Source: Schizochytrium sp. TIO01
Lineage: Eukaryota > Protista > Bigyra: Labyrinthulomycetes
NCBI GenBank assembly: GCA_004764695.1
Contig: SMSO01000031.1
Span: forward strand, 410,436-474,435
Length of the DNA: 64,000 bases
Direction: 5' to 3'
The position numbers were made by a program, and so were the translations under genes. Below the pieces are notes generated by a model. It made no database searches and was not told where the DNA came from. It saw only the letters and a list, made by a program, of their open reading frames with translations. Positions 1-54,600 of the stretch are shown here, one piece after another; the stretch's first letter is position 1, and each line of letters starts with the position of its first letter.

Positions 1-3000
1 AGGTCCTGGATCTTCTACTTGGAATGATTCTTGTTTGGCAATTAGTTCTTGTCGAAGAACTGCAACCGCTTTTAGAGCTTTAGCATGATATCGCCGCGCT
101 TTGCGAAGCTTATTTAAAAGTAAGTTGCTAGTATTTGCTCCGAAGGTAGGAGCTTCAGTTTGACCTAGCTCCTGCTGCAACTCAATTTGAAGGCGATGAA
201 CTATTTGCCAATCCGCTGCCCCACCTGGTCCTATCAATGGGTTACAATCTAAATCCTGATTTGATGAACGGCGACCTGAAGTAGACATGCCTAGGCCTTG
301 TAATCTGATGTCTAACTCATCTCGCTCTTTCTCTAACGAAGCTACGTCTTGCTCTGCACGAGACATTTCTTGAAATGCTGAGAGGTTCTCGGTGTATACT
401 GACTCTGCAGTGAGAGTGTGAGTTAAGTTTCTTTGTGTAGCTACCTTTCGTTCTTTCTCTAAGGCAAAGTATTGAGTTTCGAGCCTTGCAACACGCAGTG
501 CCAATTTCAGCTTCTCTTCTTTGATATGCGTTAAATCTTTCAAGATTGCCTTTGCATCAGTATCAAATTCGTCCAACGCGCGTTCATGCGTTTTGGCCGT
601 GTCTGTAAGTGCATTTTCTTCCATTTTTGCCTCGCGCAAATCCTTGCGAGCATCATCATCTTGTTCTCGAAGAAACTGTACTGCTTCACGAGCGCTCCTT
701 AATTCTTCAAGCCGAATAGCTAAACCAGTTGATGCGGACGGGTTAGCGACTGGTGATGCACGTCTCTCCTGGGTTTTTATGAGATCCTTCTGCGGGGCTC
801 TTGCTTGCCCACTATCCAAAGCACCAGCATCTTTTTGGTCAGAAAAAGCGTTTCTGAGCATATTAAGTAGTACCTGATTCTCGACCGTATGCGGTTCCAC
901 TCCAGCAGACACATCGACCTCTTGAGGTACCTGATACCTCGCCTCGATAATCGAATTAGTTTTCGGCGAGTCAGTTGAGAGGGAGTTAAATAGCTCAAGT
1001 TCTGCTGTAAACACACGCTTTCGTCCTAAACATAGATACGCAACAGTTGCAGCCTCCTGTATATCTCTCATCTCACGAGCCATATTGGCAAGTATACTCT
1101 GGTGTATCTGTATGCTTTGTAGATTGTCAGATGAAATATCAGACGGCTCGAGACCATCGAGCTGGCGTAGACAGTCTTGAATGTTTTGCATTGACCTTTG
1201 AAGCGATGGCAGCTTTTTATTGTCTAGCTCCAGGACTTGGTTGTAAAGTGTCGTGAGCTCGCCTGTCCGTAAAAGACCTGCAAAATGATCGTGTGGCATT
1301 TCATGAAGTATTTGTAAGATAGGTTGCGCCACACTAATTGCAGACTGTAAAAAGAGTTCGCCCATGTGTAATAGGCTCAAATTACTTTGTGCTTGTAATA
1401 AACACTCCTGAACAGAAAACCGATGGGCAGTATCCCCTTCACTTGAAGGACTTTGCATTTCATTGAAAGTGAGCTCTGAAACCTGTAAGTTTTGAATGGC
1501 TTGTTCTTTTGCTTCTTTACTTTCTCTTGTAGCCTTTATTACCATCATCAGTTGTCGACGGTCATCCTGGAGTTGAGTAAGGTTTTCCTTAAGAGAAATT
1601 TCATGCCCTGCTATTTCATTAGCTTCTTCAGCTAATGTACCTGGATCTGTTGCATCTGTGGGAGGAGTATTTGTGTCATTATTGACCTGCAAAAGAGACA
1701 TATCATTCTGTCTAGAGAAGGACGTGATTTTCTCTTCTAAAACTTGTAACTGTGTTTCAAGAGCGCTCAACTCGGACTTAATTCTGTCAAGCTCAAGATG
1801 ATTCTGTAAGGGGGCTTCGTGCGCTTGTAAAAGTGCTTGCCATGCTGACCGGGCTTGCTGCGCCGAATGCAAGGCAAGCTTCAAAGCCTCTAATTGAGAA
1901 TGTTGGTGCTCCTCATCAGGTTGATATTGCACAAAGTTGATATGGATACCATGCAGAAAGGGTTTTATTTGATCTGATATAGGTTGAATGCGCCTCTGAA
2001 CTTGATTTGCAACCTCCTTGATTTCGTCTTCTAACAGATTTCGGAGCTGGTCAGAAGTGTCTCGAAGTTTATCAACCTCTGGAAGTGTCTTTTGACCTAA
2101 TCCGCTGGATTGTAGCAAACCTAATGTACCAGCTTCGTGTTGTGAATGGCGGAATCGTTTTTCAGCTCGGTCATAGGCATCACGCTGCTGGAGTAAAACA
2201 TGTGCATCAGGCTGTTTGTAAGACTCCACTAAAGCACTGGTTTCCTTTCCGAGCTGAACCCAATCGGATTTGCAGCGTGCAAATTTTTGTTGACTAATTT
2301 TGAAAGCCTGGTCAAGCGTTTGCACAGCCTCTTCAGTCTTAGCATGCACAACCGAATACATATCAGGGATCCTTGCTCCCAAGTCGCGAGCTTTGCCGGT
2401 AAGGCTTCTCAGTAGGGCATATAGTTCTAGTGCCCACGGGATTATCTCATTGGCTAAGTTCTCAAGAAATCGAAGAACACTAGTACGCGGACTTAGCTCA
2501 CGAAAAATACTGCTGATACTTGCAGCGAAGCTGGCAAGCAGCACATCCACTTGAAGCTGTGTCTTCAGAATAGCTCCTCGTGCTTCAAAAGAGAACTCCT
2601 GAAGTTTTGAGCATTTCAGAAGGTCATGGTGCCGTTCTTTTCGAAGTACAACAAGCTTGTGCTCTGTATATTTTAAACGTGCTGCATCTAAGCTCTGCTG
2701 AGCATCGTGCTCACTTCTAATGAGTTCTTTTGCGCGAGAGAGCATGGCAGGGTTTACAGTGCCTACATATTCTTGTTGAATGCGCGTGAATTGCACTTCG
2801 CAAGCACGGGCTGCACTAATAGCCCGCTCCTGAGCCTGATCTAGAATTTTGCTCAACTCATTTAGTGCCAGTCGATCCTTTGCTAAAGTATTCTGACTTG
2901 CTTGAATGCTTGCCTCTACCTCCATCGCCAATTTTTGGTGTCCTTGAAGTCTCTGTAAAATTTGTTGCTGTCGCTCACGGAAAGTTGCTTGCACCTTGTC

Positions 3001-24000: not shown

Positions 24001-24696
24001 ATTGCAAAACTCTCAATCATTCGAAACGGTGCTCAGTATAGTACAGAGTGGACTTTTACCTATGAAGAGGCAGCAGTTGTGCGTGCCTTGCATCCAATGC
24101 AAGGATCGGAGCTCGGAGGCTTTGGTCTTGAAGTTTTGGGGTCTGCGTTTCACACAGATCTCAACACCTCAAATGTTACCTGTGACTTTTACTTAGACCT
24201 TCAAACAGGTTCCCAAGGACTGGTTCGGGTACCAGTTGATGAAATCATGAGTTCATCGCAACTTATTTGCAAGGTTCCTTCACGAGCAAGGATGCTAGCT
24301 GCAAATCCACACCTCGATCCTGCTGTGGATGGCTACCTCGTTTATGTTTCTATCTCAAACAACGGACAAGACGAAAGTGCTGCGCCTCCTATGCAATTTT
24401 CGTATTTGAGGATGCCTAGACTGCTTTCTGTCAATCCGGCAACTTTACCCTCCTCTGGGAATATCCCTCTGGTTATTTTTGCTGACTCGTTTCCGTCAGG
24501 AGCATCTATGACTTGTGTTTTTAATCAAGAGGTCGCTGTGGAAGCTCTCGAGGTGACCGAATCTTACGCTCTTTGCATAGCCCCATCTTTTTCTGCAGTG
24601 TCTGGAAGTCGCACAGTCTCCTTGGACATCATTTCATCTGACCACGTACAACTTCCACTTTCTTTCCTGAAACATCATGGAAAAGCCTTTCAGTGA
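21088..24696 (+). CDS. Giant gene segment 1: signal peptide, LamG x2, cadherin-like x2, IPT x4
   Basis: ATG at 21088 (or 21154) gives a basic n-region followed by MLFPALLVLMALGLGPLATFAA. LamG motifs include LIAFYPLDDG, FSAGIWVR, WTLVAW, IFVN, F.GAVQNLFIYSRVLS (21268-21954) and FATSFWIKP, WTHYTI, VYVNG, FLGEIDEFHLW (22009-22635). TNED..., LTY.P..NANG.. and L.IDDLG..G.GG motifs lie at 22780-23466. Confidence 0.85.
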   Translation: MGGRTVVFRLSRPKRPRRGVGNMLFPALLVLMALGLGPLATFAATNPGSSSDRLAIASEHLIAFYPLDDGSYSPGSDEPETLRNLAPYATEADAFARSGQNEGGKTTSAGLGGSRALYMNGKASASFEIDVRSCTTSSFSAGIWVRVTSLAQFKDIELTHILTLTGENPANPEELSQGWALGIQSGNWVLQLEDGESIVNSGVSVQIESWTLVAWSLDITSSTPHASIFVNHAEVARIPYTGKACAPNEMNQRSILLGGNRAFKGFHGAVQNLFIYSRVLSSEEFMALANLRSVVIRAPPTFAPRSAGYALRLSGNEILSLQDFPGTRGRRLDDGFATSFWIKPAQKTLVAPDDKTEAVIASLIGPEESFILISLIYEPQKMTSDLRVSFGGSSSTNPFIWNTYLSVSINSWTHYTISLDLEQNIAIVYVNGVEAARKLVDPTLDLAVEAPSSGSNLLIGARSFLAALQGKKLFLGEIDEFHLWGRSVTAEEAAQSAFLSSTGMEEKLLVYLPFHEWDMLIKTRSVVWGVEAWASLELVSLQPNKLSLRAIVPSTAPFVDDFLVTNEDQAALLLINATDLRRRPLTITLHSLPTSGMLFRGPFSEQVPIRSVPTELALGEPLTYMPQLNANGEELDTLTYSVSVSSASESADQEQSTQLTTIRIRVEPVADPQSLVSIKPYNHIQVSILGVGVNDIDAEQAPHGYEMKVDLNLRDSSDGYLQVAQEKEIAMKTRTPHVLEFQGILSKINTALSQITIEQPFSFEEFDQLNLTIDDLGYYGKGGPMSASQTFQVGSRLAAIPLITSVEPLEIATSTDFLRVSGLNFIGNSSGAIRCIFSFLDQDGLSTEVSSVGSKLADSETTELQCKLPSSLSDLESSSFVSLFIENESRFRGNSIRLTTRKDLEVLTVWPTSGSVSGLTWIKVHLCRDEEAPVQLQDEIFCAFNDRILSAEKLSSDLIGCLTPPAQRDGDIAKLSIIRNGAQYSTEWTFTYEEAAVVRALHPMQGSELGGFGLEVLGSAFHTDLNTSNVTCDFYLDLQTGSQGLVRVPVDEIMSSSQLICKVPSRARMLAANPHLDPAVDGYLVYVSISNNGQDESAAPPMQFSYLRMPRLLSVNPATLPSSGNIPLVIFADSFPSGASMTCVFNQEVAVEALEVTESYALCIAPSFSAVSGSRTVSLDIISSDHVQLPLSFLKHHGKAFQ

Positions 24697-36600: not shown

Positions 36601-39600
36601 TTGATTCTTCAGGCCTCGTCTTCTGTCGATTCCAAGGCCCAGAAAAGGATGAGTTTGCTTTAGTCCCAGCGAATGTTACATCGCCTACTGAACTCCAATG
36701 CAGAAGCCCAGCATGGACTGAATATGATACATCTAGTGTGGTTTTTGATGTAATCAAGTCTTCAGAATGGGGTTTTACAGAAAATTATGCTGAATTTCGC
36801 GACGCAACATTTTTGGCAGCAACCACTTTGCACTTTACTTTCCATTTAGATGCTCAAATTGGTAATATAGTACCAGGGTTTGGCCCTGAGTCAGGAGGGA
36901 CTTCTTTGCAAGTTGCCGGTGCCGATTTTGTCGCCTCTACCAGCTTGCAATGTATCTTTAACTCTCAGGTTTGGATCCCTGCCACATTTGCCAGCTCGTC
37001 TCTCATTTTTTGCTCTGTTCCGAGCATCGAAAGTCTCAGTATGGTGGAGAACAAAGGAATCAGTGTTCAAGTAACAAATGATGGGGTCTCTCTGTCATCT
37101 GCTCTTCAATTTTCATATGCAGCGTCAATTGAAACTACTCAGGTTTACCCTTCATACGTGTCTGCACAAGGGTCCGCTTCAATAACGATTGTTGGCTCTG
37201 GCTTTATGGACTCCGAGCATCTACAGTGTCGTGTTGGATTCCTTCCACCTACGCACTTTCAAGCTATTTTTCTAGACCCGCACCGTATTCGATGCATGTG
37301 GGATCAAACCCTTATCCCAGGAAAGTATGAAGTATTTGTCTCAAACAACGCTGTGGACTTCGAAGCAACTACCTTTACTATTGAAGCAACCATTGACCAA
37401 CCAATGCTACAGCGCACCTATATCTCTTCGAGTGGAGGCGATGAACTTCTTGTCGGCCCCTTCCAGACTGCACGTATTCAAAATGCTGAAAATTTATCCT
37501 GCCAAATTGGTAATGACCGTGTACCTGGTTTAGTGAACAGTGATTATGTGCAATGCTCTGCTCCGCCGTTTCTTGACTTCGGCTGGAAGACAGTTACGAT
37601 ACTTGCCATTTATGATGGCAGCGGTGAAGACTATGACATCCTTTGGCAACGTGATGATGTTGTGTTTGTTCATGCTCCACTGGAGATTAAGCAGATTCAG
37701 CCGCATTCACTGAGCTGGGCTCGCTCTACACAAACTAGGCTTTTCCTTACGGCTGACATTCCTAGTGAAATTTCTGAATATGTCAGCGCTGAAATTTCGT
37801 ACCCTAATGGAATCACCCGAATTCTTGAAGTCTCGAAATTGACCAGTAGCGAGCTTCTTGTGGATGTTCCACCAGCAACCGATTTATACATGGACAGTGA
37901 AGATCTAGGTCGATCCCAAGCACCTTTGATGGTAGGGATTCGCTTGCTCGTCAATGGTTTTGGGAATGAAGTATCGTTTATTGGGCGTGCTGCTCATCGT
38001 TCAGACCTGTTAATTGTAGCAATGCAACCTACTGTCCTTGTATCAGGAGGACGTGTTAACACCCCCATTGTTCTAACTGTCGATACAGATTTTCTTGTAA
38101 GTGACGACTCAGACATCATGTGCCGATTTGGTGTCCAGCATGTCCAAGGTACACGTCTCGGACATTCTCAACTGGTATGTGATGCTCCTCGAAATGTTGC
38201 AGTTGGTTCATTTCTTTCCTTAGAAGTCAGTATCGACGGTGCGCAGTTTACCGATAGTGGCTTTGAGTTAGAATATATTGGAAATCTTGAGATAATGTCT
38301 CTTGAACCTGAGTTTGTACCACAAGGTGGATCGATTATTCAAATTCATGGTGAAGAATTTCCGGTGTTTCGTGACTTGCTTTGTCGTTTTAGATCAGGCC
38401 CCTACACAAAGGTGACTAATGGTTTTCGCCAAAGTGAAAAGGTCATTACGTGTCTAACGCCAGCACAATTTGAGCTTAGCTCATCTTATTCAAGTGTGTC
38501 TGTGGATCTTGTCCTTCCAACTGCATTGCCCGGCGTATATATCGAACTCTTGCAGTCAAGCACCACTCATGAATTTGCGTATATCAGTAACATTGAAGTT
38601 ACGGACGTAACACCGCGAGCTGGCCCTGCACGTGGCGGAACACTTGCTTACATTCGCGGCAATGGATTTTCGGACCTTCACTCGCTTGTTTGTGGATTTT
38701 CACTCAAATCGGCTGATCATACTTTTGCAAAGGGGACCTTTGGGAAAGGCGTCACTGTGACCACGACTGCGGAGTTCATTTCAAGCAACGAAGTGCGTTG
38801 CGAGATCCCTGCCGTCGATGAACTCGCTGTTGGCCAGGGCTCAAGTAAGCAAATTGAAATAAGTGTCTCCTCTAACGGAGCGGACTTCTCTCAAGCATTT
38901 GTGATATTTCGTTACGAACCAATTGCAACAATATCTCGACTTTCTCCAAGCCATGGTCCTTGCGAGGAAGGAGTTCTTGTTACTGTATTTGGAAATAATT
39001 TCGAAGATTCAGCAAATTTGCAATGCCGGTTTGGAATGTCTGCTCCATCCAAAGCTGTTTTTATTTCCTCTGAGGAGATTCGTTGTTTGACGCCACGCCC
39101 TCTTCACCAAGGCCCTGTGGCATTAGAGGTTACCAATAATGGGGTAGATTACTCTGCAGATGTTGTGTTGTATTCATTCATGGAGAGACCTCTAATTTAC
39201 CACATTGAGCCCACATTTGGACCTGTTACTGGAGGTACAAAAGTTAAAGTGTTTGGAGCTAACTTTAAGGAAGGGACAACATGCCAGTTTGGTATCGTCA
39301 CTATCCCTGTCTCGCGGTTGTTGAGCAGTAATGAAGTAGAATGCGAAGTGCCGTCCTTAGAAATTAACTTCAGTGACGAGTCTTTGATTGTCAACGTTTC
39401 CGTACATGACGCGGCTAGGGCACCAAAATGAAGGCATAGTGGCTTCTTGGGATGCAACCTATGCCTATGGCCTTTCTACAGTAAATTATAGATATATGCC
39501 AGAACTTGAGCTCAACAGCATCTATCCTCCTCAAGGGCCGATTTCTGGAGGGACCCGTGTTCTGCTTAGCTTCACAACTTTTGCAACAGTTGGCTCTGTA

Positions 39601-42600
39601 CGTACCACTGGGTTTTGTAAGTTTTTTGTAGAGGGCACAGAAGAAAATCTACTTTCTTCTGCTACACTGGTATCTGAAGACTTAATTGAGTGTGTAACCC
39701 CAGCTCTATCAAGGTCCTTTGGAAAACGTTTCCATGCCCAAGTTACAGTAACCTTCAATGGCCAGGACTTTGCAAATCAAGGACTTTCTTTCCTTTATGT
39801 GGCAAACCCTCAGCCGCAACGACTTTCCAACACACGGGGGCCTGCTCACGGTGGGGTCGCTTTGAGAATTTTCGGAGAAAACTTTATTCGGTCCCCTCTC
39901 ACGGCGTGTCAGATTGAGAAGGATGTTGTTCAGGCTAGCTATATTTCTCCCGATGGAAGTTTTATGGATTGTATTACTCCAGTGAACCAAAGAGAACGCA
40001 ATGAGATTCAAGAAATTCATGTTTCGACCAGCGAGTCTCCGAAACGAACGACATATGAAATCGACATTTCATCACTTCCTACGCAGTCCGAGATTCACTT
40101 CCTCACATTCAATGCAAGTGGGTCAGACCCTCTTACAGGAGCTGTTGCTGAGATTCAACATATTCAGTCAAACGCATCAACCGTGCTTCATGGCACTTTT
40201 ACGATGTCTTTTCGTAACGAAACTACCGAGGCTTTGCCTTTTGATGTTTCTGCCAACGGCATGGCAGCTGCCTTGAATGCACTGAATTCAATTGATGGGG
40301 CAACAGTCTCTCGTACTGTTGATGATGAAGGATTTCACTGGTACGTCACATTTCATGGAAATGCTGGTGACTTGGAGCTGTTAGTCGCGAACCATTCGAA
40401 ATTGCACAGCATTGCTTCTGATGATGCAACGGTTTATGTCTCTTCTATTAGAAATGGAAGCTCTGTGGCAATTTCGTCAGGCTCGTTTACGCTGGCTATC
40501 GAAAACACCGTTGTTGAGTTGGCTTATGATGTGGACGCAACTGAGATGAAAGAAGCACTGGACTCGCTGTATGGAATTTCGGGAATCCAAGTCACACGTT
40601 CTGCCAGTTCTGACCTCAACGGCGCTTTCGCCTGGTTTATCACATTTCCTGGGACTTCACCGTATTCACTTGCGGTTGCAAACGTTTCAGGATTGCTTCC
40701 GGCCACAGCCGTAAAACCATTTCAGGAGAGAATTCAGCTGGGAAGTACAATCGGGGGAAATTTTACGCTTTCCTTTGCTGACAAAGAAACGTACCCCATT
40801 GAGCTTTTTTCCAACGCTTTTACAATTTCAAATGTCATTTGGCAAGACCTTGGCCTGAATGTTACTCTTGAAGAATCCGTCGAAAATTCTTCTTTGTGGG
40901 TGAAGAAGATGACGGTAACTTTTGATGACATTCCTGGTGTGCCAAATGACCTTTCTGTAAATATTTCGGGTGTCACGGGCACTCTTTCAGAGGTTTCAAC
41001 TAGGCTTATACAGCATGGAGTTCAGGAACTATATGGCTCTTTCAAATTAAGCTTCGAAGGAGAATCAACCGATTCGTTGAGCTTTGATGTAAATGCTACA
41101 GAACTAAAATCTGCATTGGAGGGCCTCGCAACGATCGGGTCTGTGAATGTATTAGAAGAGAGCCGCACAGTGTCTGATGTGCGATGGCGTGTGACTTTCA
41201 CCTCGCATGGTTCTCCTTCAAACATTGGCCCCCTTAACAAGCTTCAAGCAAACTCTGATCGTGGGATCGGAACAGGCTTTTTCCTTCGCACATACAAAAT
41301 TCAAGAGGGCTGTTGCTCTGTTCGAGTCACGATCGACGGACAGCAATATTCACCGCCTCTGAGCTATCGTTATGATTATAAACCTTCTGTGGACCACGTC
41401 AGTCCAATGTTTGGAAGCCTGAATGGCGGGACGGTTCTTCACGTGAAAGGTTCGGGCTTTTATGAGGCAGCAACAATTGCATGTGTCTTCCAAGGTGACG
41501 TCGAAACCCCTGCAAAATATGTCAACGAAACAACGATTACATGCCATAGCCCTCCATACATTGCTTTTCGGGAAGTTCCTGAGCAAGGCAATGTTTCTGT
41601 AACGGTTCGCTATCCTATGTTTTCATCTGATTCACAAGACTCAAATACGCAGGCTAGTTTTAAATACTCTTCACGTCTGCGCATCGACCATATCGTGCCA
41701 GACCGCGGTCTAAGTAGAGGCGGCCTAGTTGCCGAAGTTTTTCTGGAGCATGATGTTGATGAGTCAGAGTTGGAAAGTGCATGGTGCATTTTCGCAAGTA
41801 CTTCGAATGACAAATTATTTACGAAAGCAAACTATTCTACCGAGGAGAGTGTAACGTGTGTGACACCCCCGCACGAAGCAGGTAGTGTGAGCGTATATAT
41901 TACGCTGAACAATCAAGACATTTCAGAAAATGCAGCGAGTTATCAATATGAGGAGCCGCTTAATCTTGAATACCTAAGTGTAATCGCGGGTCCTCGCGGA
42001 GGTGGTACACCTATTCGGCTTATCAGTAGTGAGATTCCGCGCACTGAAGGGTTGGGCTGTGATTTTGGAGCTCGAGGTATTGTTCCTGCCCAGTGGTTGA
42101 ATGAAAATCAAGTGGAGTGCATTGTACCACCTCTTTCGTTGGAAGAAACTGTTTTATCTGGTGATATCGAAACGCTTCTACTCCACACTACAAGCCGCTC
42201 GGAAGATTTGAATTTTGGTGCTAACGCTTCATTTAGTATGGAGAGTACCTATGAAACAATTCTTTTATCAGTCTCTGCAGCAACAAACTGCTCAGTCTTA
42301 GACATAGAGAAGTCATTCTACAACGGAACAGAAAGAAGTTGGCTTATTCGTACAAGCTGCCTAGAGGCCATCAAGCAAAGCGCATCTAGTGAACTGTATT
42401 TCACGGACTTATTTGACAGCTCTATCGTGGTTGCTTTGACAACTAACAATGTGGAATTTTCGAATCCGTTACTCTTCGAAGTATTTGATTCTCCCTCTGT
42501 ACTACAGGTTGTTCCTCTGTCAGCTCCTCTGCGCGGGGGTACTCTTGTAAAGATAGAACTAGACCTGAATGCGACAGCATTAGATGTATCCTGCTGGTTC

Positions 42601-45600
42601 GGTGCACACATGGTGAGTGCTGATGTTTTCCATGATGGATTTCAGGTTGAGTGCCTCACGCCACTCGTTGAACTTCCTCAACAAGTCCCCCTTCAAGTTT
42701 CGGCCAACACTGGTATAGACTTTTTTGAGGGAACATTTACTTTTGAATTTGTGAACACTCTTCCAGCAGAGATTCTTGAGATTGAGCCTCGGTTTGGGCC
42801 TGCATCGGGAGGTACATTACTTACATTGTATGGTGAGGCACTTGATGGACTTGATCTCGACGACCAGGATATTTTCTGTTTGTTTACGAATCCGATTGAT
42901 ACTCAAGTTGTCGACACTACTGCTACTCTTCTTATGCCGTCTGGATCTGTACAATGTCTCACACCATCGCAAAACAATTTCTCTGCGACCCAACCCAAAT
43001 ATGTATCGCTTGATATTGGCGTTGGTGAACAGCGACAAGTTCTCACAGCATCTCATGTAAAATTCACTTTTGATGAAGATATTGTGCTGCAAGCAATTGA
43101 TCCGCCTTATGGACTTCGCTTTGGCGGCTCGGATATTCTTGTTCACGCTGGACCTGTGCCTGCATCTCGCCAGTATGTGGATGGCCAGCTTCTGTGTCAG
43201 ATTGGCAATCAAGTGGTCGATGCAAAACTCCTTCAACCTGGAGATATTGCTCTTCTGAGCTGTCCAGTTCCTAGGCTTGAACCTGAAAAACAAATCGAAA
43301 GCTTTGGGTTTTCAGGCTCTGAACCACATCCCCGGGTGGAGAGGATTCAGGTCACCTCGTCAGCACCAACTAAAGAGGTTGGCAGAATTGACTTTGTGGC
43401 AAGTGATTTTGAAAAGGATGTTCAAAATGTTACTCTACTTGGGGGAGATGCAACTATCTATGAGCTTTCAACAACATTAGAACCTTCCAACCGAGCACAG
43501 GTCGTCTCTATTTCTACGAGCTCAAGCGCCCTTTATCCTGAAACCCATTCAATCACTGTGCAAGCTGACCTTGAAGTTCAACAAACTACGGCCAGAGTTA
43601 TTCTAGATGTTCAAGCATCAGCTGAAGTACACCAAGTTCAACGCATTTCAGTTTCTGCTGCGCAGAATCTTGACGGGAGCTTTACTTTAAGCTACCAGAA
43701 CGTCTCAACCGGCAACATTCTTGTAAGTAGCAGCGCAACCGACCTGGAAAATGCACTTTCGCACATCGTAAGTGTGACGGTCTCTCTCGATAACGATTAC
43801 GATGTTTCAGGTATTCGTCACGCATGGTTAGTGACTTTTCCCATCGAAGAAGCAAACCCAGATCTTCTTGCGCTTGATGATAGTAACTTAGAAGGTGAGG
43901 ACCACAGTTTTATAGTTGAAGAGATTACCCCCCAAGCACTCTGTGAAGTTCAGACTATCAAAATCAACAAAGCAGCAAATGGCATCACGGTATCTTATCA
44001 TGGATTTGAAAGTTCTCTTTCTCTCGCAAACTCCGATATTTCCGATTCTAGTAAAGTTGAAACATGGATAGAAAGTATCCCGGCTTTTGGTGAAGGAAGT
44101 GTTTCTGTCAGTCAAGAACAAGAAGAAACTACATTTGTGGTTTATCAAGTATCTTTTGAGGGAATTAATGGTGACCTAGATTTGTTAGAGCTCTCCGACG
44201 AAGATTCTTTAGTTCTGCAAAACCGCAACGGAACAAGTATTCATGTACATGGTTTTCTGAATGTTGATGTCTACACTGAAACTGGGTATAGCGCTCTGGT
44301 GAGCATGGATCTTTCAACAGTACGAGAAGATGACCTTGTACGCACTCTCACTTCTCAATTTAATGGATATGATGAAAGCCTCTTCTCTTTGCGTATAGAC
44401 CGAAGTACGCCTTCAAACGGGAATAATGGAGCTAGAACATATATAATGACTTTGCCACCATACTTCGAGGTGAAAAAGTCTGCTGTAGACCAGCTTGTTG
44501 GTACTAATACAACCGTTTCTGTCGCGTCATCCAATGGACTTGATACAGCGAGTGGATATTTCACCGTTCAGCTCCAAATGGGAGCAAATGGAGGATTGAC
44601 TGCTTCATCTTCCCCTATCGCATTTAATGCATCCGCAAACGAACTAGAGGATGCGCTTCATAGCTTAGGGCTATCTTTTCCACCGGCCGAAGTTAACCTT
44701 GTAGACTCTGGGCCATTTACTTACTCCTGGCTTATCAAACTCTCAGGACCTCCCAAGAATGCTTCCAACGGCGACCCGGAGTACTTTGTAACGAATGGTG
44801 CGTCCCTGAATGGCTTCTCGGTATCTACAAAGAAAGAACGCAGCGCACGATTAAACGAAATTCAAACCATTCGAACAACGACGTCGTCCGGGTTGGGGCG
44901 TATAACAGGAGTTTTTGGAATCTCTTTGGGCACAGTTTACGGAAAGGTCCGCGGTATTCCCTGCGATGCAACTGAGGAATATGTTCGTGATGCCATTCAT
45001 GATCAAGCTCCTGAGACGGGGTTAGTTACCGTCACTCGAGAAGACATAGGAACATTTGAATATGCTTGGACAATTACATTCGTAGAGCTTGCTGGCGACC
45101 TACCAATGCTTTCAGTAGACAGTTCTAAACTTTATTCGACCCTGCCTGGAGATGATGCATTCTTGGAGGTTAAAGAAGTTCAGAAAGGCGATGGTGGCCC
45201 CCTCGATGGGTTTTTCCTTCTACGTTGTACCTCATGTGGGCAAGTTGTACAAGAAACTAAGGTCCCATACGATGCCTCGGCGACTGAAATGCAGACGTTG
45301 GTGAATAGTTTACTTTCTCAAGGTGGAAACGCTTCAAGTGTTGACTCAGTGGAGGTCTCTTCTGAAGATCTTAATGGAGCTCGCACATGGACGATTTATT
45401 TTGCGGCGTTGAAAGATGACCCTTTACCACCGACGCTTGAAGTACGCATGGGTGGTCTACAAGGCTCTGGTGCGGACGTCTCGCTTAAGTACGCAAGCTC
45501 TCCTAGCATTGCTGAGATCCAATCTATTCATTTAATACCCTCCCTATCTGATACGATTACCTGTTTTGCTTCTGGAAACGAGTTCAATTTATCTTATGGA

Positions 45601-48600
45601 ACAAGTGCAGCTTACTTGGCGCTTTCGTTGCAGGAGGCACTAAAATCTGGGGAAGTTATTCAAGTATCTCGCCAAGATGATTCACCAAATCGAACCTGGT
45701 ATATTACTTACACCGATCGCGTTGGCGACGTTCCTGATGATCTTCTGAGTTGTGCAAATAGCGATGTGACAATTGCAACTCAGGTAAATGGAACTGGGCA
45801 AAGCTTGAGTGGAGGCTTTCAGCTCCGCTACAATGGCGTGAGTTCTGATTACCTGACGTTCAATGCAAGTGTAGGGGATATAGAAACTGCCCTAGAAAGA
45901 ATTAACCGAGCAGCAATTAGCATAACTCGTAGTTCAAGCCCAGATATCAACGGTGGATACTCATGGAATATTACTTCTGGTCGTGAAATGGAAATTGATG
46001 TGGTTTATGCAGACTCTCTTTTTGGAACCAATGCAGTCGCTCGCTTCAATCCCCTCACATCCCTACCAGACCGTAATGAAACCTTTCAGCTATTTTATGA
46101 AATGGAGTACACTAGATCTCTTGGGTTTAGTACTTCCGCTTCGGAACTTCAGGAGGCTCTCGAGGCGTTAGAAAAAATAGATGCTGTAATTGTATCACGA
46201 GCTGGGCCAGACAAATATGGTAATATAACTTGGATGATCACCTTTATGCCTTTGATCGACGGGGAATACACGAAGAATTATGGAGCTCAGCCAATCTTCA
46301 CAGTAGATGAAGAAATGCTTCACCGTGTAGATGTTCAAAGGGTTTCGTATGGCACACGTGCTTTTGACGGAAATTTGACTCTATCTCTCGGCAACGGAAA
46401 CAGTCAAACTGTTCAGATGGGTCCTGAATGGTCTAGTACTATGCTTGCCAACCAGGTACATGCAGCATTACAAAGCCTATATGTTAATATGACAAATGAG
46501 GTAGATGTCATTCAAACTGGTCCCACTGTTGATGGAACCGTATCGTGGGAATTTGAAATGCCTTGGAATGGGAATGAATACGACAAGTTAAATGTTGCTG
46601 CAACTGGCTTTGAAGGAGTAGCTACTCTGGCCAGCATTGGATACAGCTCTTACGCAGAGCCTGAGCTTTCAGGAAAATTTAAACTTATTGTAAACAACAG
46701 CATTGATTCAACAGAAGCTCTGTTTATGAATGCTAGTGCAGAAGAACTCCAGCTTGCTCTCGAAGCCCTAGTGGGTGAGGATACTGTGCGTGTGGTGAAA
46801 TTGCAACAGCCGCAAGACCAGAACAACCGAAATTTTTTTTGGGATGTTACATTTCTAGATGATACTTTTGATAACAGTGAAGTGTCCCCAATTCTTCAAC
46901 TGGATGTCTCTGAGATTGCTGGTCCTAATGATCGCGTGGCAAATGTCACTGTTTTGGACGTGGAGACGGTAAATGAAATGCAGATAGTAACTCTTCTTGC
47001 AAAGAACAATAGCGCTCTAGAGGGGTCTTTTGCATTCACTCTTCCTCAATCTTGGTTTCCAGAACCATATTCTAACTTCTCTGCATCAGCAAGGACAACG
47101 GCATACCTTTCCTACAATGCAACCTCGTCTGAAGTAATGCGCGCTATGATGGAGATTTTATCTTTGCATGGTTACAGTACTGATGCAGCTCAGGTGCTTC
47201 AAGTTGAGTCACTCGAAGAATCATCGTGGCGTCTATCTGCACTCTCTGAGCTTGTGGGGGACCTTGAGCCTATTATTGTTCAAACCAGCCGTCTGCGCAG
47301 TTTGGCAAACGTAAGTGTTGTGGAAAAGGTCAATGGTACTACTAAGAGAATATCTGGAGCACTTCGACTTAATGTTATTGGACCATGCTACGACGGAGAA
47401 TGCTATACTCGTGCGTTGAAGTTAGATATTACTTCCTCTACAACAGCTGATGATGTCAAGTCAGCTCTTCAAGTCCTTGACGACCCTTGGTTGTATACAG
47501 CTCAGGTTTTCATGGAAGTAACTGATAACACAGGTGGTAGAAGCTGGACCGTGAGCTTTGCTGATGGCACCCCGTACAGACGGTTGTTTGTCGACACAGC
47601 TTTGTCCACACTTTCTGGAACACGACCTTGGACCCGTGTAGATACATGGGGGCTGGAAAGTCCCACTGGCGAGGTTATGGTTCGCCTTTCTATCAATGGA
47701 CAAGACTTCTCTTTGAGCGAACAATCATATGAATACCTTGAGTTACCAGTTGTCCATGGTGTGTACCCGAACCATGGTTCAACTGCAGGTGGGACACTTG
47801 TTGTGATTTTGGGAGAATATTTAGCAGACCCTGCGAGTGCACGACAGCTATCCTGCCAATTTGGAGATTTGGCACCTATCGAAGCTTTTGCAGTGAATAA
47901 GAGTGCAGTTTATTGTGTAACCCCTGCTGTAGGCTGGGCTGGTCCACGCGAAGTAAAAGTTGGGCCATGGGGTGCTGCTACCTATGCACCTTCACGTGTA
48001 AACTTTACGTTTTCGGAGCCCCTCGTTATTTTCGGCATATACCCTCGCCAAATTCCCCTTGGTCAAGAGTCTGAGGTGCGCATTACAGGAAGTGGGTTTG
48101 TGCCTTCAGATGAACTCGTTTGTAGATTTTCTGTGGCCCAAGCTGCGGAGCAAATCAAACTCCTTGTAACGGCAACATGGCTAGACTCTTTCGAGGTGCA
48201 CTGTAAATTCCCGGCTCATGCAATCAGTGTTGCAAGCAACATGCATGTAGAAGTGTCGAATAACGGACTAGACTTTACTTCATCAAGTTCAGACTTGCTG
48301 GTTTTTGAAGCTCCCAATGTTACCAACGTTTCTCCACGAAGTGGTGCAGCGAATCGAGTTGGTTCAAAACTTGTTCTTAGTGGATCAAACTTTAGTAGCT
48401 CGCCCGAGTTAGCATGTCGCTTTGATGGTGAAATCGTAGCCCCTGCCAAATTCGTAAATGAGGGAGAGGTTTGGTGCTGGACTCCGGTACTAAACCGTTC
48501 TCTTGATAACTTTTCCCTGAATCGTCACCTGCATACAAATGGTGACTTCGTATTTCCTGACACCCACGGATTCCCTCTGTACCAATCAAGGTTGGTTGAC

Positions 48601-51600
48601 TTAGAATTATCAATCAATGGTGCTGACTTTCATCAAACAGGTTTCCGATTTCTTTACACTAAAGAAGCCTCTTTGGATACGGTTTCGCCGGCAAAGGGCT
48701 ACATTGGTACAGCTTCAGGTCTCCACCTATTCCTTCAAGGTTCAAACTTCATCAACTCTACGGATCTTTCTTGTCAGCTTGGACATTTCAATGGAGTAGC
48801 CACATATTTGTCTCCTTCTGCTATGGTTTGTCATATTCGTCTCAGCCCTGATTCTCACGAACTTACTGGGCAAGGCAGACATTTTGTGGTGAGCGTCTCA
48901 AATAATGGGTATGACTTTTCGACTGATTTCGTAGTGTTCGAGAGCCTTGGACAGTGCCCTGAGGGTCGGTACTGCTCTGAGTCAACTCAAGCATTGCCGT
49001 GCCCGCCTGGTGCATATTGCCCTGGTTTAGGGAATGCGAATTTCACACTCTGCCCTCGTGGAACATATCAGCCTATGCCTGGCACTCAAGGTTGCTTACG
49101 GTGTCCAATTGGATATGCCTGCCCAGAAAATGGCATGCGAGTTCCACGTATCTGCCCTGCTGGCTTTGTATGTGACGTGACAGGTACAGAAGAGCCACGC
49201 CAACCCTGCCCTGAGGGCCACTTTTGTCTTGAAGGTACAGCAACCACAGCTACCACTTGCGGTGATCCATCAGAACTTTCGAGTGAATTAACACCTTCCC
49301 GCCGCCTCGGAGAGTTGAGTGGGACCATTCGCAAGCATCGATCTCCTTTTGGCGGGGATTTTGTTCTTGGATCCCGAAACTCAGCATGCTGGAGCAATTC
49401 CACCTCTGATTTTGGCCTGCAAGTAACACACTATCCTGGGCGCTTCTGGTCTGAGCGGCATCTGCTTCCGCTGGACCCCTACACTCCATTTTCCCCTATG
49501 CGTGGACGTTATTGTCTTGACGACAGCTGTATGCGATTAAGTGACAGCGACGCCATGCGAGTTACAGATTATGCTTTCACGTACACCAACTTCAATTTGC
49601 GTAGACCGGTACCTTGTCCTGCTGGCACCTACTGTGCTCCAGGTACTGCTGTCGGGGAAAGCAACATGAAAAATTTTACTACTCCTCAGCCTTGTTTTGA
49701 GAGTATGTATTGTCCAGAGGGTAGTGCATCGCCTCAAGGTGTGGGGGATTGCCCCGCAGGTTTCTATTGCCCCTTTGGAACACGCTTACCTTGTCCACCA
49801 GGGACATACTGTCCCCGAGAAGGAATGGATACTCCCCTTCCGTGCCCTCCTAGTACTTTTAATAGTATGGTGGGGCAAACAGCATGTGTTTCTTGCGCGC
49901 CTGGCTACTATTGTCCTGGCTTTGGTCGTGTAGATCCTGCTACTTGTCCTCATGGGTTTGTTTGTTCCGAGGAAGGTTTGAGTAAACCAGATACACGGTG
50001 CCCAGCTGGCTTCTATTGTCCAAATGGTACCATGACCTCTGACGTGTTCCGTAATGATACCACACGGCGTCCATACCCTTGCTACCCCGGTACATATTGC
50101 CCGGGTGGTGTTGGCTACAATCAATCGATTGAAGGAGATTATCTATACGCTCAGCCATGCGCCCAAGGATTTTACTGTGAGCTTGGTTCCACATCGCCGA
50201 AAGGAGCAGGGTTGTGTCCAAAAGGATTTTATTGTCCTCCTGGTACAGCTGTTCCTATTCCTACTGCCCCCGGCTCATTTGCGTACATGGAAGGTACTGT
50301 GCAAGCTGCAAAATGCTTGCCTGGGTATTATGCTCCGACCATTGAGACAGTTTCTTGCTACCCATGTCCCGCCGGTACACAATGTGTAAACGATGGCACA
50401 TCAGAAGCTCTCATTTGTCCACCGGGTACATACAAAACAATGACTCAACCTGGCGAGAGTGTGGTATGTAAAGGCTGCCCAGCAGGCACTTGGTCTAAAA
50501 ACTGGGAACTTCGGGATGACAGTGAGTGTACGATCTGCCCACCAGGTGTAACATGCCCTATGGATGGTATGTCATTTCCATGCTCATATGACGATTTGCC
50601 AACACCATATACTCCCACGGGGCTCAGCGAATCCAAATATAAATGTACGAACAAGGGGTCCAACTTTTATTATGGTTACCTGGAATGGCCAATTGATGAA
50701 CGAGGCCGTGGTCCAAACCTTGTAACATCTACCAAGGTTCAAGGCGCAACTGAAATTATTCAAGATGACGAAGGAAACAATATCACTGTTACTGTCCAAT
50801 GCTACAGTAACTTGCAGCCTGAAGGCAGTAAGGTCTATCAGCGTTTTCAAGATTATCACGGTCCACGTTATGAAATTCAGTCTGGCGGTGTGTACCATCA
50901 AGGGTATGGCGATGGAACCTATGAAGGTTATTATGGACGAGGATCGCTTTATATTGAACAGCCAGTTTCAAACATATACTATTCTGCACGAAACTGTACC
51001 CCTGGTTATTTCACGTATAACACAACTAGTCGAACGGACTCATGGGTAGTTGGCACATGTGAAGCAGATTTAATTTGTGCATACACCAATAAAGCAGAGG
51101 CCCAACCATGCAATGAGGGATATATTTGCGGAAATGGCACAAACGCTCTTACAGCACTTGATATTGAATGTGCACCTGGTTATTACTGTGACTTTGGAAC
51201 GACAACCGATGTCAGCTTGGAAGCTCCACAAGGACGTTATCATGACCTCTGTGAGGAAGGTTACTACTGCGAACGAGGCACTGGCGCAGGCCAAGCTCAG
51301 TCAAAGTCATGCCCCGTAGGATACTTTTGCCCTACTGGACTCGGAAATCCATACATGGGACTTCCTGCGGGCGACTCACTTGTGAGATTTTTGAACGAGA
51401 CATCTGCAAATCCTTTCTATGACTACCTGTATATTGCCATGTGGGACCCAGAAAACTTTGAACCGCGTGAAATATCCGCGCATGATGACCGCTGCTTCAA
51501 AGGCATCAACGAGGACCTTCAGGAGACTTATCGCATGAAAAGAACAGCAGATGGGCTGTACGATGGCTATATTTCGGTTGCAATTGAGAATGACCTACAA

Positions 51601-54600
51601 TGTGGTCGTGATCACAAGTGGCGGCTTATATCGGATACAATTGACCGTCTTCGCTGTGACTGTGATGTATTCAAGGCGCGCGCTTTACTGATATACAGTT
51701 TGTGGGATTGTACGAGAAACAACAACAGTGACGCATGTGCAGAACTTGCAAGCGATGCTGATGGGTTTTACGCTAAGTTTGAATACACCACAAGTGAGCT
51801 GAAGTTCATCAAGGCACGAAAACTTTGTGATCATGCACTTGATCCAAGTATTGAGTGTGATGACGTTCCCCATGGGGATCTTCTTGTTGTAGAGACCAAT
51901 GCCACATCAACTGTTGTATATGATATGGAGACATATTGTGAGGGAACAGACTACCCAGAAAATTGTATGCTTTTCAAATTTCGAAACGATGCTTCTCAGA
52001 CACATCGAAGGAGCATGGCATTCAACTCCTACGATGATCTGAAGGCATTTGTATACTCGGAAGAAGACAACCTTATTGATGATGATGATGCAACCACAAT
52101 GGGAGAACGTCTCAGAGATCGTTACGGCATTACATCTTCGTCATCGTTTGACCCATATCAGGGAACATTTAATACTCAAGTTGACAACAAAATGGATTGC
52201 TCGCAAACTGATCGGTGTTCATACATTGATGCGATTCTCTATGATCTTTGGGGGTCTATTCAGATTATTGACGAATTTGGAACTGATGCAAAGGCATTAC
52301 TGAGTTCAGACCGTCTCGATTCTTGCGCATGCCAGGACTTGGCAAGGTGTCCAGATGGAACAACTTCTTCAACAGGGGCTACTAACATTTATGCCTGCGT
52401 GAAAAGTGGAGATGAGGTCCTTACACGTTTAATGCCGCTGGTACCAATGAATCCAATCATTAACATGAGTGGATGGGAAGATACACTAGAGATCATGGAT
52501 CGCGAGGAGACTGACGAGGAAGCAGCCGCTGGACTTTTTGGTGACTATGTATCGGACGGCTATGTTGGCCTTGGCACTATTGCTCTCAAGGCCTGGGACA
52601 TTGCAGTTGTGACTTTAGACCTTCGTAGTGTATTGCGTAATATGACGTACAACGACCACTACCAGTTGTCCATATATCTAGATTGTAAACCGTGTCAGGT
52701 TCGAGTTATTTGCGACAGCTTGGATGAGACAGAACGTCCTGACTGCTGTGATTGCTCGCGGCACGGTTTACCTTACTGGTTTGAGGACGTCAATTATGAC
52801 CCAGAGGACTACCCTGATGACAAGCATGCTCTAGTCCAGGTCAACATTGCAGCACAGCGGGACCTTGAAGTTGTTTTTGTCCTCGAGCTTGTTCATGGTT
52901 TATACTACGGTCCGTTCCAGGACATCTCACCTGCCGCAGGCGATATTGTTATTCATCGCCCGTCGCGCGCTAATTGGGGTGAACGAGACCAATTTATCGC
53001 CGTTATTGTGCGTTCTGACTTCGAGGATCTCGGTCTACCCTACAACTTGCCACTCAGCATGCGCAGTTCTGGATCAACGTCAGGTTCTGAATATAGTCAA
53101 TACGAAGTTGAGGATGACGCTTTTATCGATCGTGTTGCGCGCATTCATATTGGTGATCCTGACTATGGTACTCGCTCGAACACGGAATTTAGCAACAGTT
53201 CAGCATCCAGTCGTAGGCGAAGTCTTGCAAACTATACGTCTCTAGATGATTTACTGAATGGGGGTACAAGCAACTCCTCTAACACCACACTAGAGTACGT
53301 AGCACGAGATCCTTCAAGTCTACTTGCTCGGGATGACGGATGGTGGGATCTAGTCGACGACGATGGTACGGACTTCTTTGGATTGCATTATTTGCCATTT
53401 ATGAGCAATTGCCGAGAGTATGACTCACATATTTACTTCAGCAAGGTTTTAGAAATGCATCCAGAACCATACTGTACACATGTTTCCCTTGAGGAAACTA
53501 TTTACGTGAGCCCATACCCATGGAAGCACCAGACCGAACCCCAAGCGGACGACTGCAGGTTACCACCTGACGAGCTTGATGCATTGTATGCTCCAGACAA
53601 ATTTTGTGTGGATTCTGAAGATTGCAAGTCTAAGGAAGCTGAGTATCCTGGTATGGGCCTTTCGTGCACATATGAAGAGGAAATCTATCGTGCTGCTGAT
53701 AAGACTCGTTGGTACGAAGCAAGCGAGGGAACAACCTTGTTTCATATCACCAAATACCCTGTCAATGTTGATGATTTTGTTACATCTGGCAGTGAAAAAT
53801 GGGGCCGCCGTTCAAATCTTGCTGCTCTTGTAGGCACTGAAAATTTGATTCCCATTGAAGTTGAGGAGGACTATGGAAGTCAAGAGAATCTTGTTCCGCG
53901 TAAAGTTTATTTTTACTTAATGTACTACCAGTACACTGCGGAGCGCAAGTCGATCGTTTATGGATCCATTCGTTTTGATGATATGTGCACCATTAGTGAT
54001 GACCCCACGGTGATTGAGAAGTTTTCAAAGTATGACCCTCCCATTGGAGAATGTGATAGCGATGACTATGACTACACTGTCTACTTTCGATGGAGTCCTC
54101 TTGGATGGTTTGACTTGATTAACAACTTCCAGTTCAGTTGGGATGTATATGCCCTCTTTTTCATGGTTGTTGGATTCGGAAGTGCAATGGTGGGTATGGT
54201 GTTGTGGATCTTCTCGCGGGTGCTCACAAGGCTTAAACACCCACCTCCTTTCAAATTCTTCTCTTTTTACCGAACTGTGGCCAAACCATCATCCTACGGA
54301 ATGTTCCTCTCCTCGGTGCCAGTTGCATTGGTGGGTCTGGTAACTCTAACCTGGTTCACGTGGCTGGCCTCGGATGATGCATCTGTTTCTCCTTCCGCTG
54401 TCACTTTCGAAGGCATCACCGGAAACTTCCAGGACACTCTTATTCTGACCGACAGCAACCGTGAGCGCTATCGCAAAGGACGAATGGGAATGGTTTTCAT
54501 TGTTAGTGCGTTTTACATGATTTATGCTTCTGTTAAGCTTGCCATTCCTGCGAATCGATTTGATGAGCGCCGACGTGACGAACGTGCAAAATATGGAATT

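What the first reader, a model, noticed from the sequence alone, without database searches (positions are those of the whole stretch)
43273..47667. Recursively nested ('matryoshka') domain array that predicts a branched single-chain protein
Seen: a complete unit here reads (N/A/C)E(V/I)Q.I [opening strand] + G.F.L....T..I...AS...(L/M)..AL..L....V.V......W.(V/I)TF....GD...L.....V.....G [body]. In this ~1,465-codon insert nine opening-like strands are stacked with no bodies between them at 43285-43660: EKQIESF, RVERIQV, KEVGRID, KDVQNVT, TIYELST, AQVVSIS, PETHSIT, EVQQTTARV, HQVQRIS. Exactly nine bodies without an adjacent strand of their own follow (43675, 44251, 44554, 45208, 45811, 46078, 46369, 46672, 47356), interleaved with four complete strand+body units (43942, 44854, 45511, 46972). 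The counts balance like brackets. Inference: each domain is inserted in the loop after strand 1 of the previous one (A1..A9 B9..B1). The chain would run out as a thin strand and return through the bodies, forming a 9-domain stalk with side twigs. I know of no description of nesting this deep. Some strand assignments are by eye and degenerate.
Basis: partly seen in the sequence, partly recalled or inferred. Interest (0 to 1): 0.92.

Follow-up and report, generated by a model that had tools for sequence, protein, structure and literature searches.

The report
Recursively nested domain array in IPT loop
A giant surface protein of a thraustochytrid-like protist carries a 1,460-residue branch made of 13 copies of one small domain inserted into each other like Russian dolls, about nine levels deep; I found this way of building repeat proteins across a large unannotated family but in no paper.

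Summary
Window 43273-47667 is a 1,457-residue insert in one loop of an IPT domain of a roughly 11-12,000-residue membrane protein. It starts with nine short EVQxI-type strands spaced 12-19 residues apart. Thirteen ~100-residue domains follow; four have their own strand and nine do not. As brackets the order is balanced.

The nested reading is supported, mostly by evidence outside the window:
- In 152 relatives, strands and bodies total 2144 and 2147 (per-protein r 0.88). Ladders of 9-13 close exactly, for example nine strands then nine bodies.
- These arrays always sit in a loop of a host domain, IPT here and FN3 in relatives. Models rebuild the host around the insert.
- For relative P0129, AlphaFold2 gives the ladder pLDDT 81-93.
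- In an ESMFold2 split test on P0129, the ladder given as a separate chain docks on the strandless bodies (0.75 against 0.06 for the best control). It docks in reverse order, each strand between a body's W.VTF strand and its tail strand.

AlphaFold2 on the window's own smaller nest was inconclusive. The nine-level array itself was never folded.

The domain matches no Pfam family but is related to the mycobacteriophage Bxb1 "CTE-like" domains (PDB 9d93, 9d9w). Four of six literature searches looked for such a nest and found none.

The parts
43069..43293 (+). Host IPT/TIG domain, N-terminal part (strands up to the C..P strand)
   Evidence: An IPT profile built from this protein's own copies matches positions 2-72 here. 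Pfam TIG hits lie in the flanking parts of the frame.
43285..43650 (+). Ladder of nine short EVQxI-type strands with no bodies between them: 43285, 43333, 43372, 43414, 43453, 43495, 43537, 43573, 43630
   Evidence: Strand-matrix scores are <3, 6.1, 8.8, 9.6, <3, 5.9, 11.3, 3.4 and 18.4 bits. Spacing is 12-19 residues, against a family median of 13.
43675..43941 (+). Body without a strand of its own beyond the adjacent ladder strand 9 (innermost level, pairs with the strand at 43630)
   Evidence: Domain HMM hits; register
43942..44244 (+). Complete unit (own strand CEVQTIKI plus body): first side unit
   Evidence: Own strand scores 15.9 bits; body
44251..44853 (+). Two strandless bodies (44251, 44554), inferred partners of ladder strands 8 and 7
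   Evidence: the body at 44554 is also found by HMM
44854..45201 (+). Complete unit (own strand NEIQTIRT plus body): second side unit
   Evidence: Own strand scores 21.1 bits; body found by HMM
45208..45510 (+). Strandless body, inferred partner of ladder strand 6
   Evidence: HMM hits
45511..45804 (+). Complete unit (own strand AEIQSIHL plus body): third side unit
   Evidence: Own strand scores 14.8 bits; body found by HMM
45811..46971 (+). Four strandless bodies (45811, 46078, 46369, 46672), inferred partners of ladder strands 5, 4, 3 and 2
   Evidence: HMM hits. Each ends in a V.V..V..G tail strand.
46972..47349 (+). Complete unit (own strand NEMQIVTL plus body): fourth side unit
   Evidence: Own strand scores 16.5 bits; body
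47356..47664 (+). Last strandless body, inferred partner of ladder strand 1 (outermost level)
   Evidence: HMM hit; register
47668..47748 (+). Host IPT/TIG domain, C-terminal part (last two strands, V.V.LS.NGQDFS...YEY)
   Evidence: IPT profile positions 70-89 match here. Removing the insert in silico raises the IPT score from 30.5 to 47.4 bits and extends the match to positions 2-96.
39796..41379 (+). Same plan at smaller scale in another IPT of the same protein: four ladder strands (40000, 40048, 40087, 40147), four bodies (about 40186, 40477, 40756, 41035), then the IPT C-terminal part at 41311-41379
   Evidence: excision test 41.9 to 46.5 bits
41947..42486 (+). Same plan at depth one in a third IPT: one strand (42160) plus one body inserted at the same loop
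   Evidence: excision test 49.2 to 56.2 bits

Best explanation
The stretch encodes a side branch of a giant IPT-rod surface protein. The branch is built by recursive self-insertion of one ~100-residue domain.

The domain. A complete unit has an N-terminal EVQxI strand, a core (GxFxL strand, T..I strand, AS..L..AL helix, V.V.R strand, W.VTF strand) and a C-terminal V.V..V..G tail strand. The first strand lies in the middle of the sheet, between the W.VTF strand and the tail.

The nesting. New copies have been inserted, again and again, into the loop after that first strand. The chain therefore leaves the IPT loop and lays down one strand for each of about nine levels, roughly 13-14 residues per level. 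It reaches the innermost domain and returns through the nine bodies in reverse order. Each body clamps the strand deposited on the way out. Four loops hold a second, complete copy, which gives side units.

The consequence. Both ends of the 1,457-residue insert meet at the base, so it can sit in a loop of the IPT without breaking that domain. The result should be a zipped, probably stiff, tree-shaped projection from the main rod.

Shown: the parts, their order and balance, the IPT split, and the family-wide grammar. Predicted in a relative: which strand touches which body. Inferred: the same pairing in this window, the stiffness, and any adhesive or spacing role.
For: Anatomy in the window:
- 13 bodies, 9 ladder strands and 4 own strands, forming a balanced word.
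- The insert sits in one IPT loop. In-silico excision restores a full-length IPT match for all three inserts in this protein.

Grammar in the family:
- The unit profile hits 6,549 protein clusters.
- In the best 150 of those hits plus two found earlier, strands total 2144 and bodies 2147, with per-protein r 0.88. Ladders of 9, 10 and 13 close exactly.
- Arrays with a ladder have equal counts 53 times against 19 expected (maximum 33 in 2,000 shuffles).
- About half of all bodies (1,095 of 2,136) have no strand of their own.
- A paralogue in the same genome (16,277-codon frame) has 81 strands, 85 bodies and a 13-strand ladder.

Structure, relative P0129 (four strands and four bodies inside an FN3):
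- AlphaFold2 with a 24-row orthologue alignment gives mean pLDDT 80.2 and pTM 0.58. The four ladder strands are beta strands at pLDDT 81-93.
- Solved FN3 domains superpose on 95-102 model residues at about 2 A over model range 307..899. The host closes around a ~500-residue insert.
- ESMFold2 split test: bodies 512-850 plus ladder 351-397 give ipSAE 0.75, 0.80 and 0.69 against 0.06 for the best control. Partner pLDDT is at least 75, and the runs share at least 88% of contacts.
- Lowest-error contacts: 358-364 with 783-788 and 826-833 (last body); 370-373 with 684-687 and 723-728 (second to last); the rest of the partner with 568-608.

The gene is real. Polymorphisms between assemblies are 15 synonymous to 17 non-synonymous, where 24% synonymous is expected.
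Against: No model shows the pairing in the window itself.
- AlphaFold2 on the window's 4+4 nest gave mean pLDDT 62.6 and pTM 0.33. The ladder scored 47-73 and the host IPT under 35. The body cores scored 83-96 without any ladder contact. The alignment was misaligned over the ladder and the host.
- The nine-level array was never folded.

The ladder count is soft. Two of the nine strands are not recognised by the strand matrix, and two tail strands resemble ladder strands.

All structural support is prediction. The split test's calibration is for separate proteins, not for pieces of one chain.

The strand and body detectors were built from the same family and miss members, so exact counts carry error. 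With a simple 130-residue gap rule, many arrays came out unbalanced.
Confidence: 0.78

Rival explanations
1. This is an ordinary tandem array. The 13 domains are beads on a string, each complete in itself. The 125-residue ladder is a separate small beta-meander domain or a flexible spacer ahead of them.
For: In the AlphaFold2 model of the window's 4+4 nest, the body cores fold at pLDDT 83-96 while the ladder is at 47-73. The first two ladder strands look like a hairpin with each other. Ladder loops of 5-7 residues would allow a meander.
Against: - It does not explain why strands and bodies are equal in number across the family (2144 against 2147; nine and nine, ten and ten).
- It does not explain why ladder strands keep the same E-V-Q-x-I motif as strands that adjoin their own body.
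- A linear 13-domain string could not easily return to close an IPT loop.
- In P0129 the ladder docks on bodies even when the adjacent fourth strand and its body are left out.
Confidence: 0.1
2. This is a strand-swapped tandem chain. The tail strand of each body serves as the missing first strand of the next body, and the ladder is only a leader.
For: MAFFT aligned the tail of a preceding body with the own-strand position of the next one. Tails such as VDVQRVSY score as strands.
Against: - Complete units carry both a preceding tail and their own strand.
- In the split test, each ladder strand lies between the W.VTF strand and the tail of the same body.
- The equality of counts would again be unexplained.
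Confidence: 0.07
3. The frame is a decaying pseudogene or an assembly artefact, and the pattern has no structural meaning.
For: The giant gene is split into three frames in this assembly, at about 24693 and 39423. One other assembly has a 1-base gap at 43286.
Against: - The frame runs 6,079 codons without a stop.
- The break at 39423 is absent from two other assemblies, whose 1-base difference joins the frames.
- Synonymous changes are in excess.
- The same grammar appears in thousands of proteins of other species.
Confidence: 0.03

Closest known systems
Mycobacteriophage Bxb1 'CTE-like' domains: tail-tip cage gp23 (PDB 9d93 chain M) and the C-terminal extensions of capsid gp14 (9d9w) and tail tube gp19
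   Same: Same domain family by sequence. The unit profile hits gp23 at E 4.7e-26, with EVQ strand, GxFxL, T..I, AS..L..AL and V.V all aligned. It hits the capsid protein at residues 317-375 with E 1e-4. Foldseek ranks these chains first. In gp23 three N-terminal halves (266-323, 329-390, 387-459) are followed by two C-terminal halves (512-552, 556-594). On sequence alone that looks like a three-level nest.
   Different: These are phage virion proteins with one to three copies. The apparent insertion point in gp23 is after the V.V strand, not after the first strand. The phage extensions are dispensable, immunodominant and of unknown function (PMC8704799). [quoted passage not shown] I could not read the Bxb1 structure paper, so I do not know whether its authors describe nesting.
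Flagellin and flagellar cap FliD (D0-D3 out-and-back domains), T4 tail sheath gp18, pneumococcal pilus adhesin RrgA
   Same: They work the same way. Each outer domain is made of an N-terminal and a C-terminal segment, with the next domain inserted between them, so the chain runs out and back. This is from my own knowledge. FliD chains appear among weak Foldseek matches, and Pfam gives a sub-threshold Gp18_domIII_N hit.
   Different: They have three or four levels of different domains. Here one domain is inserted into itself 9 times, up to 15 in relatives by the count, with branches and a countable grammar. No sequence relationship was shown.
Tandem Ig-like, FN3 or IPT rods of giant surface proteins (fibrocystin-like proteins, bacterial adhesins)
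   Same: The host protein is such a rod: about 70 tandem IPT domains, a signal peptide, a membrane-spanning cluster and a coiled-coil tail.
   Different: In those rods the repeats follow head to tail. Here the extra arrays are nested and hang from a loop of single rod domains.

Membership tests
Bxb1 CTE-like domain family (solved examples 9d93_M, 9d9w_A) | Significant profile-to-sequence match over the strand, core and helix | tested here: met
   hmmsearch of the 18-unit window profile against PDB sequences: gp23 E 4.7e-26 with three N-terminal stretches significant on their own (i-E 5.4e-7 to 0.014) and two weaker C-terminal ones; capsid protein E 1e-4
Bxb1 CTE-like domain family (solved examples 9d93_M, 9d9w_A) | Same fold | tested here: inconclusive
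   Foldseek on the window model: 9d93_M E 1.7e-5; 9d9w_Aa probability 0.99, 80 columns, rmsd 3.2. The model was a multi-domain one of middling quality, and no single-domain model was made.
IPT/TIG (PF01833) as host domain | The two flanks together give a full-length IPT match | tested here: met
   N-terminal part matches profile positions 2-72 and C-terminal part positions 70-89. Excision raises the score from 30.5 to 47.4 bits and the match to positions 2-96.
Nested (discontinuous) domain insertion | The insert's two ends meet, so the host domain is rebuilt | tested here: met
   Met in relative P0129: FN3 structures align to 95-102 residues at about 2 A across model range 307..899. For the window's IPT there is only the sequence test; the host came out under pLDDT 35.
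Nested (discontinuous) domain insertion | The early segment of level n packs with the late segment of level n, in reverse order | tested here: inconclusive
   Predicted for relative P0129 with controls: 0.75 against 0.06, with contacts A1 to last body, A2 to second-to-last, A3 to the one before. Not obtained for the window: AlphaFold2 on its 4+4 nest was unclear and the 9-level array was not folded.
Nested (discontinuous) domain insertion | Early and late segments are equal in number and ordered like balanced brackets | tested here: met
   Window: 13 and 13, balanced. Family: 2144 against 2147, with deep ladders closing exactly. Equal counts 53 against 19 expected.
Plain tandem repeat array | Every unit carries all its own elements | tested here: not met
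   Nine of 13 bodies here, and 1,041 of 2,136 in the family, have no strand of their own within 30 residues upstream.
Any Pfam-A family for the unit | Match above the gathering score | tested here: not met
   Only TIG (window) or fn3 (relatives) reach their thresholds. The best hit for the unit is Gp18_domIII_N at 19.1 bits, below its cut-off of 27.

The most novel reading that the evidence does not exclude
Stramenopiles use a so far undescribed way of building repeat proteins. A CTE-like domain shared with phages is inserted into its own first loop again and again, up to about 15 levels, sometimes with two children per loop. One chain then folds into a zipped, tree-shaped projection whose order of parts follows balanced brackets. 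Such projections hang from loops of IPT or FN3 rod domains in thousands of giant surface proteins.
Probability: 0.65. Interest if true: 0.9.

Novelty: new variant of a known kind. Interest (0 to 1): 0.82.

Why it matters
Repeat proteins are normally thought of as beads on a string. This family adds a second rule: the same bead is placed inside the previous one.

That rule produces branched, closed-ended modules that can be dropped into a loop of another domain. It raises three linked problems:
- Folding: the outermost domain cannot finish until about 1,400 residues later.
- Mechanics: a stalk zipped by one strand per level.
- Annotation: half of the domains look incomplete to any tandem-repeat model, and the family has no Pfam entry despite more than 6,500 clusters.

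It also links an orphan decoration domain of mycobacteriophages to eukaryotic surface proteins. Finally, it offers a natural template for designing branched single-chain scaffolds.

Tried and rejected
- AlphaFold2 on the window's own 4+4 nest with its host IPT (alignment A2) was inconclusive. The ladder and host were poorly aligned with the relatives. A mixed alignment with IPT rows was worse and was not used. A host-free alignment was made but not folded.
- Splitting proteins into arrays at gaps over 130 residues cut the long ladders from their widely spaced bodies. This gave false imbalance, with 8-10 stacked strands followed by no bodies. Counting without splitting resolved it.
- A conserved cysteine in the first ladder strand of P0129-type proteins gave no usable disulfide clue to pairing.
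- The wide structure search on the 950-residue model was filled by FN3 hits. It confirmed host closure but gave no range for single nested domains.
- The strand-like scores of VDVQRVSY and KEVQKGD were rejected as extra strands, because both occupy the tail position.
- Literature searches for nested or 'matryoshka' domain arrays, IPT, diatoms and oomycetes found nothing relevant. The Bxb1 structure paper (PMC12124961) is not held.
- The sequencing runs are contigs only. Fragmentary contigs in one run guessed to be RNA hint at low expression but do not show it.


Full report
WHAT IS THERE

The finding lies in frame in a 6,079-codon open frame (39388-57627), preceded by open frames of 4,912 and 1,294 codons on the same strand. 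A profile built from the protein's own copies finds about 70 tandem IPT/TIG domains across the three frames; Pfam confirms TIG. The protein has a signal-peptide-like start near 21151, a cluster of hydrophobic segments at residues 4920-5420 of the last frame, and a charged coiled-coil-like tail. It is therefore a giant membrane protein with an IPT rod outside the cell.

A neighbouring gene is 56% identical to a protein of Hondaea fermentalgiana. The genome is 64 Mb in 37 contigs.

THE OBSERVATION

Positions 43273-47667 hold 13 copies of a ~100-residue domain (GxFxL, T..I, AS..L..AL, V.V.R, W.VTF, GD.P.L, then a V.V..V..G tail). They are found by jackhmmer, by a family HMM and by alignment.

Four copies are preceded by their own (N/A/C)E(V/I)QxI strand, scoring 14.8-21.1 bits with a family strand matrix. 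Ahead of all 13 lie nine strand-like segments at 43285-43650. Seven score 3.4-18.4 bits. The other two score under 3 but sit at the periodic positions; spacing is 12-19 residues, against a family median of 13.

Two apparent extra strands (46327, 45172) occupy the place where every other body has its tail, so I read them as tails. The order is then S9 B SB B B SB B SB B B B B SB B, with 13 strands and 13 bodies, balanced as brackets.

THE INSERT IS INSIDE A DOMAIN

The IPT profile matches positions 2-72 just before the insert and positions 70-89 just after it. Removing the insert in silico raises the IPT score from 30.5 to 47.4 bits and makes the match full length.

The same holds for two other inserts at the same IPT loop in this protein:
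- four strands plus four bodies at 40000-41307
- one strand plus one body at 42160-42435

An insert in a loop must bring its two ends back together. A linear string of 13 domains does not do this naturally. An out-and-back chain does.

THE FAMILY

No Pfam family matches the unit. A profile of the window's 18 units finds 6,549 protein clusters at E <= 0.001 among 1.84 billion representatives. Named members come from oomycetes and a brown alga. The language-model atlas points to diatoms and oomycetes.

In many relatives the arrays sit inside FN3 domains rather than IPT: Y.VEW, then ladder and bodies, then YYFRV.A.N..G.G.

THE GRAMMAR TEST

I built a body HMM and a strand matrix from the family. 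I then wrote each of 152 relatives as a word of S (strand) and B (body).
- Totals are 2144 S and 2147 B, with per-protein r 0.88.
- About half of all bodies have no strand of their own.
- Ladder spacing is 13 residues, interquartile range 13-14.
- Among arrays that contain a ladder, equal counts occur 53 times against 19 expected when counts are re-paired at random (maximum 33 in 2,000 trials). Of those 53, 41 are balanced words against 10 expected for random order.
- Followed without splitting, long ladders close exactly. P0011 is nine S then nine B, and P0109 is ten then ten. P0001, P0014 and P0027 close with one or more complete units inside. P0005 starts with 13 S and closes.
- A 16,277-codon paralogue in the same genome has 81 S, 85 B and a 13-strand ladder.

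Nine levels is not the record.

STRUCTURE PREDICTIONS

AlphaFold2 on the window's 4+4 nest with its host gave good body cores (pLDDT 83-96). The ladder was weak (47-73), the tails were weak and the host was unfolded, with pTM 0.33. The alignment was out of register over the ladder and host. I count this as inconclusive.

For relative P0129 (950 residues; FN3 host with four strands and four bodies), 24 orthologues align in register, and the glutamines of the ladder strands are nearly invariant. AlphaFold2 gave mean pLDDT 80.2 and pTM 0.58. All four ladder strands are beta strands at pLDDT 81-93, and both halves of the FN3 are confident.

A search of 48,161 solved chains aligned FN3 domains to 95-102 residues at about 2 A over model range 307..899. 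An example is 8oty_A, with Z 13.2, rmsd 2.2 and 101 of 101 residues aligned. The host closes around a 500-residue insert.

THE SPLIT TEST

To separate 'ladder pairs with bodies' from 'ladder is its own sheet', I gave the complex predictor two chains. One was the three strandless bodies of P0129 (residues 512-850). The partner was the first three ladder strands (351-397). The fourth strand and its body were left out.

ESMFold2, without alignments, scored ipSAE 0.80, 0.75 and 0.69, against 0.06, 0.01 and 0.00 for the three controls. Partner pLDDT was at least 75, and at least 88% of contacts were shared between runs. The tool's mark was reached by 51 of 78 solved complexes and 2 of 108 mismatched pairs.

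The lowest-error contacts are:
- strand 1 (358-364) with 783-788, the W.VTF strand, and 826-833, the tail, of the last body
- strand 2 (370-373) with 684-687 and 723-728 of the second-to-last body
- the remaining partner residues with 568-608 of the body before that

It also shows that the strand sits between two strands of the body rather than at an edge. It remains a prediction. The test was calibrated on separate proteins, not on pieces of one chain.

WHAT IT MOST LIKELY IS

The stretch is a side branch of the IPT rod, made by repeated insertion of a complete unit into the loop after the first strand of another unit. The inferred pairing in the window is:
- strand 9 with the body at 43675
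- strand 8 with 44251
- strand 7 with 44554
- strand 6 with 45208
- strand 5 with 45811
- strand 4 with 46078
- strand 3 with 46369
- strand 2 with 46672
- strand 1 with 47356

The complete units at 43942, 44854, 45511 and 46972 are second children in four loops. Function is inferred only from context: a stiff, closed-ended projection on a cell-surface rod, plausibly for spacing or adhesion.

RELATION TO KNOWN THINGS

By sequence the unit belongs with the 'CTE-like' domains of mycobacteriophage Bxb1. Matches are the tail-tip cage gp23 at E 4.7e-26 and the capsid C-terminal extension at E 1e-4; Foldseek ranks the same chains first. Those extensions are dispensable, immunodominant and of unknown function (PMC8704799). 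PMC13252515 mentions three CTE-like domains in the Bxb1 distal tail protein.

In gp23 the profile matches three N-terminal halves followed by two C-terminal halves. That suggests a three-level nest at a different loop. I could not check this against the structure paper, which is not held.

Out-and-back nesting of three or four different domains is known from flagellin, FliD, T4 gp18 and RrgA (my own knowledge). Self-nesting to 9-15 levels with branches and a countable grammar is something I found in no paper.

IS THE GENE REAL?

Contigs of 19 other public runs from 12 studies hold most of the stretch. Between assemblies there are 15 synonymous and 17 non-synonymous differences, where 24% synonymous would be expected.

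The break between the second and third frames lies at a run of A's. Two other assemblies lack one base at 39423, which joins the frames. A third lacks two bases.

VERDICT

I rate it a new variant of a known kind (nested domain insertion), of high interest.

Noticed in passing
window 39405-39431: The frame break between the 4,912-codon and 6,079-codon frames lies at a run of A's. Two other assemblies lack one base at 39423, which joins the two frames into one of about 10,990 codons. A third lacks two bases at 39424.
   Followed up: partly
window 24690-24700: A second frame change separates the 1,294-codon frame from the 4,912-codon frame, with IPT domains on both sides. It is probably the same gene, through an assembly indel or a short intron.
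   Followed up: no
window 43286: One older assembly (run X7, contig depth 8.6) lacks one base at the first ladder strand, which would shift the frame there. It is either an error or a strain difference.
   Followed up: no
G000:C32:about 887000-936100, minus strand (L001-L006): A paralogue in the same genome has a 16,277-codon open frame, 85 bodies, 81 strands, a 13-strand ladder and no IPT domains.
   Followed up: partly
PDB 9d93 chain M (Bxb1 gp23), residues 266-594: The unit profile matches three N-terminal halves and then two C-terminal halves. On sequence the solved phage protein itself looks nested three deep, at the loop after the V.V strand.
   Followed up: partly
P0130 residues 370-520 and its orthologues: Some relatives seem to carry a second insertion point. 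A strand plus GxFxL plus T..I is followed by a new EVQ strand before the helix, with conserved cysteines.
   Followed up: no
window 48942-54150: About 1,700 residues between the last IPT and the membrane-spanning cluster match no Pfam family.
   Followed up: no
window 21151-22100: A signal-peptide-like start (MLFPALLVLMALGLG...) is followed by a region that looks like a lectin or LamG-type domain by eye.
   Followed up: no
window 54150-57627: A cluster of hydrophobic segments (residues 4920-5420 of the frame) is followed by a long charged, coiled-coil-like tail ending in a basic run.
   Followed up: no
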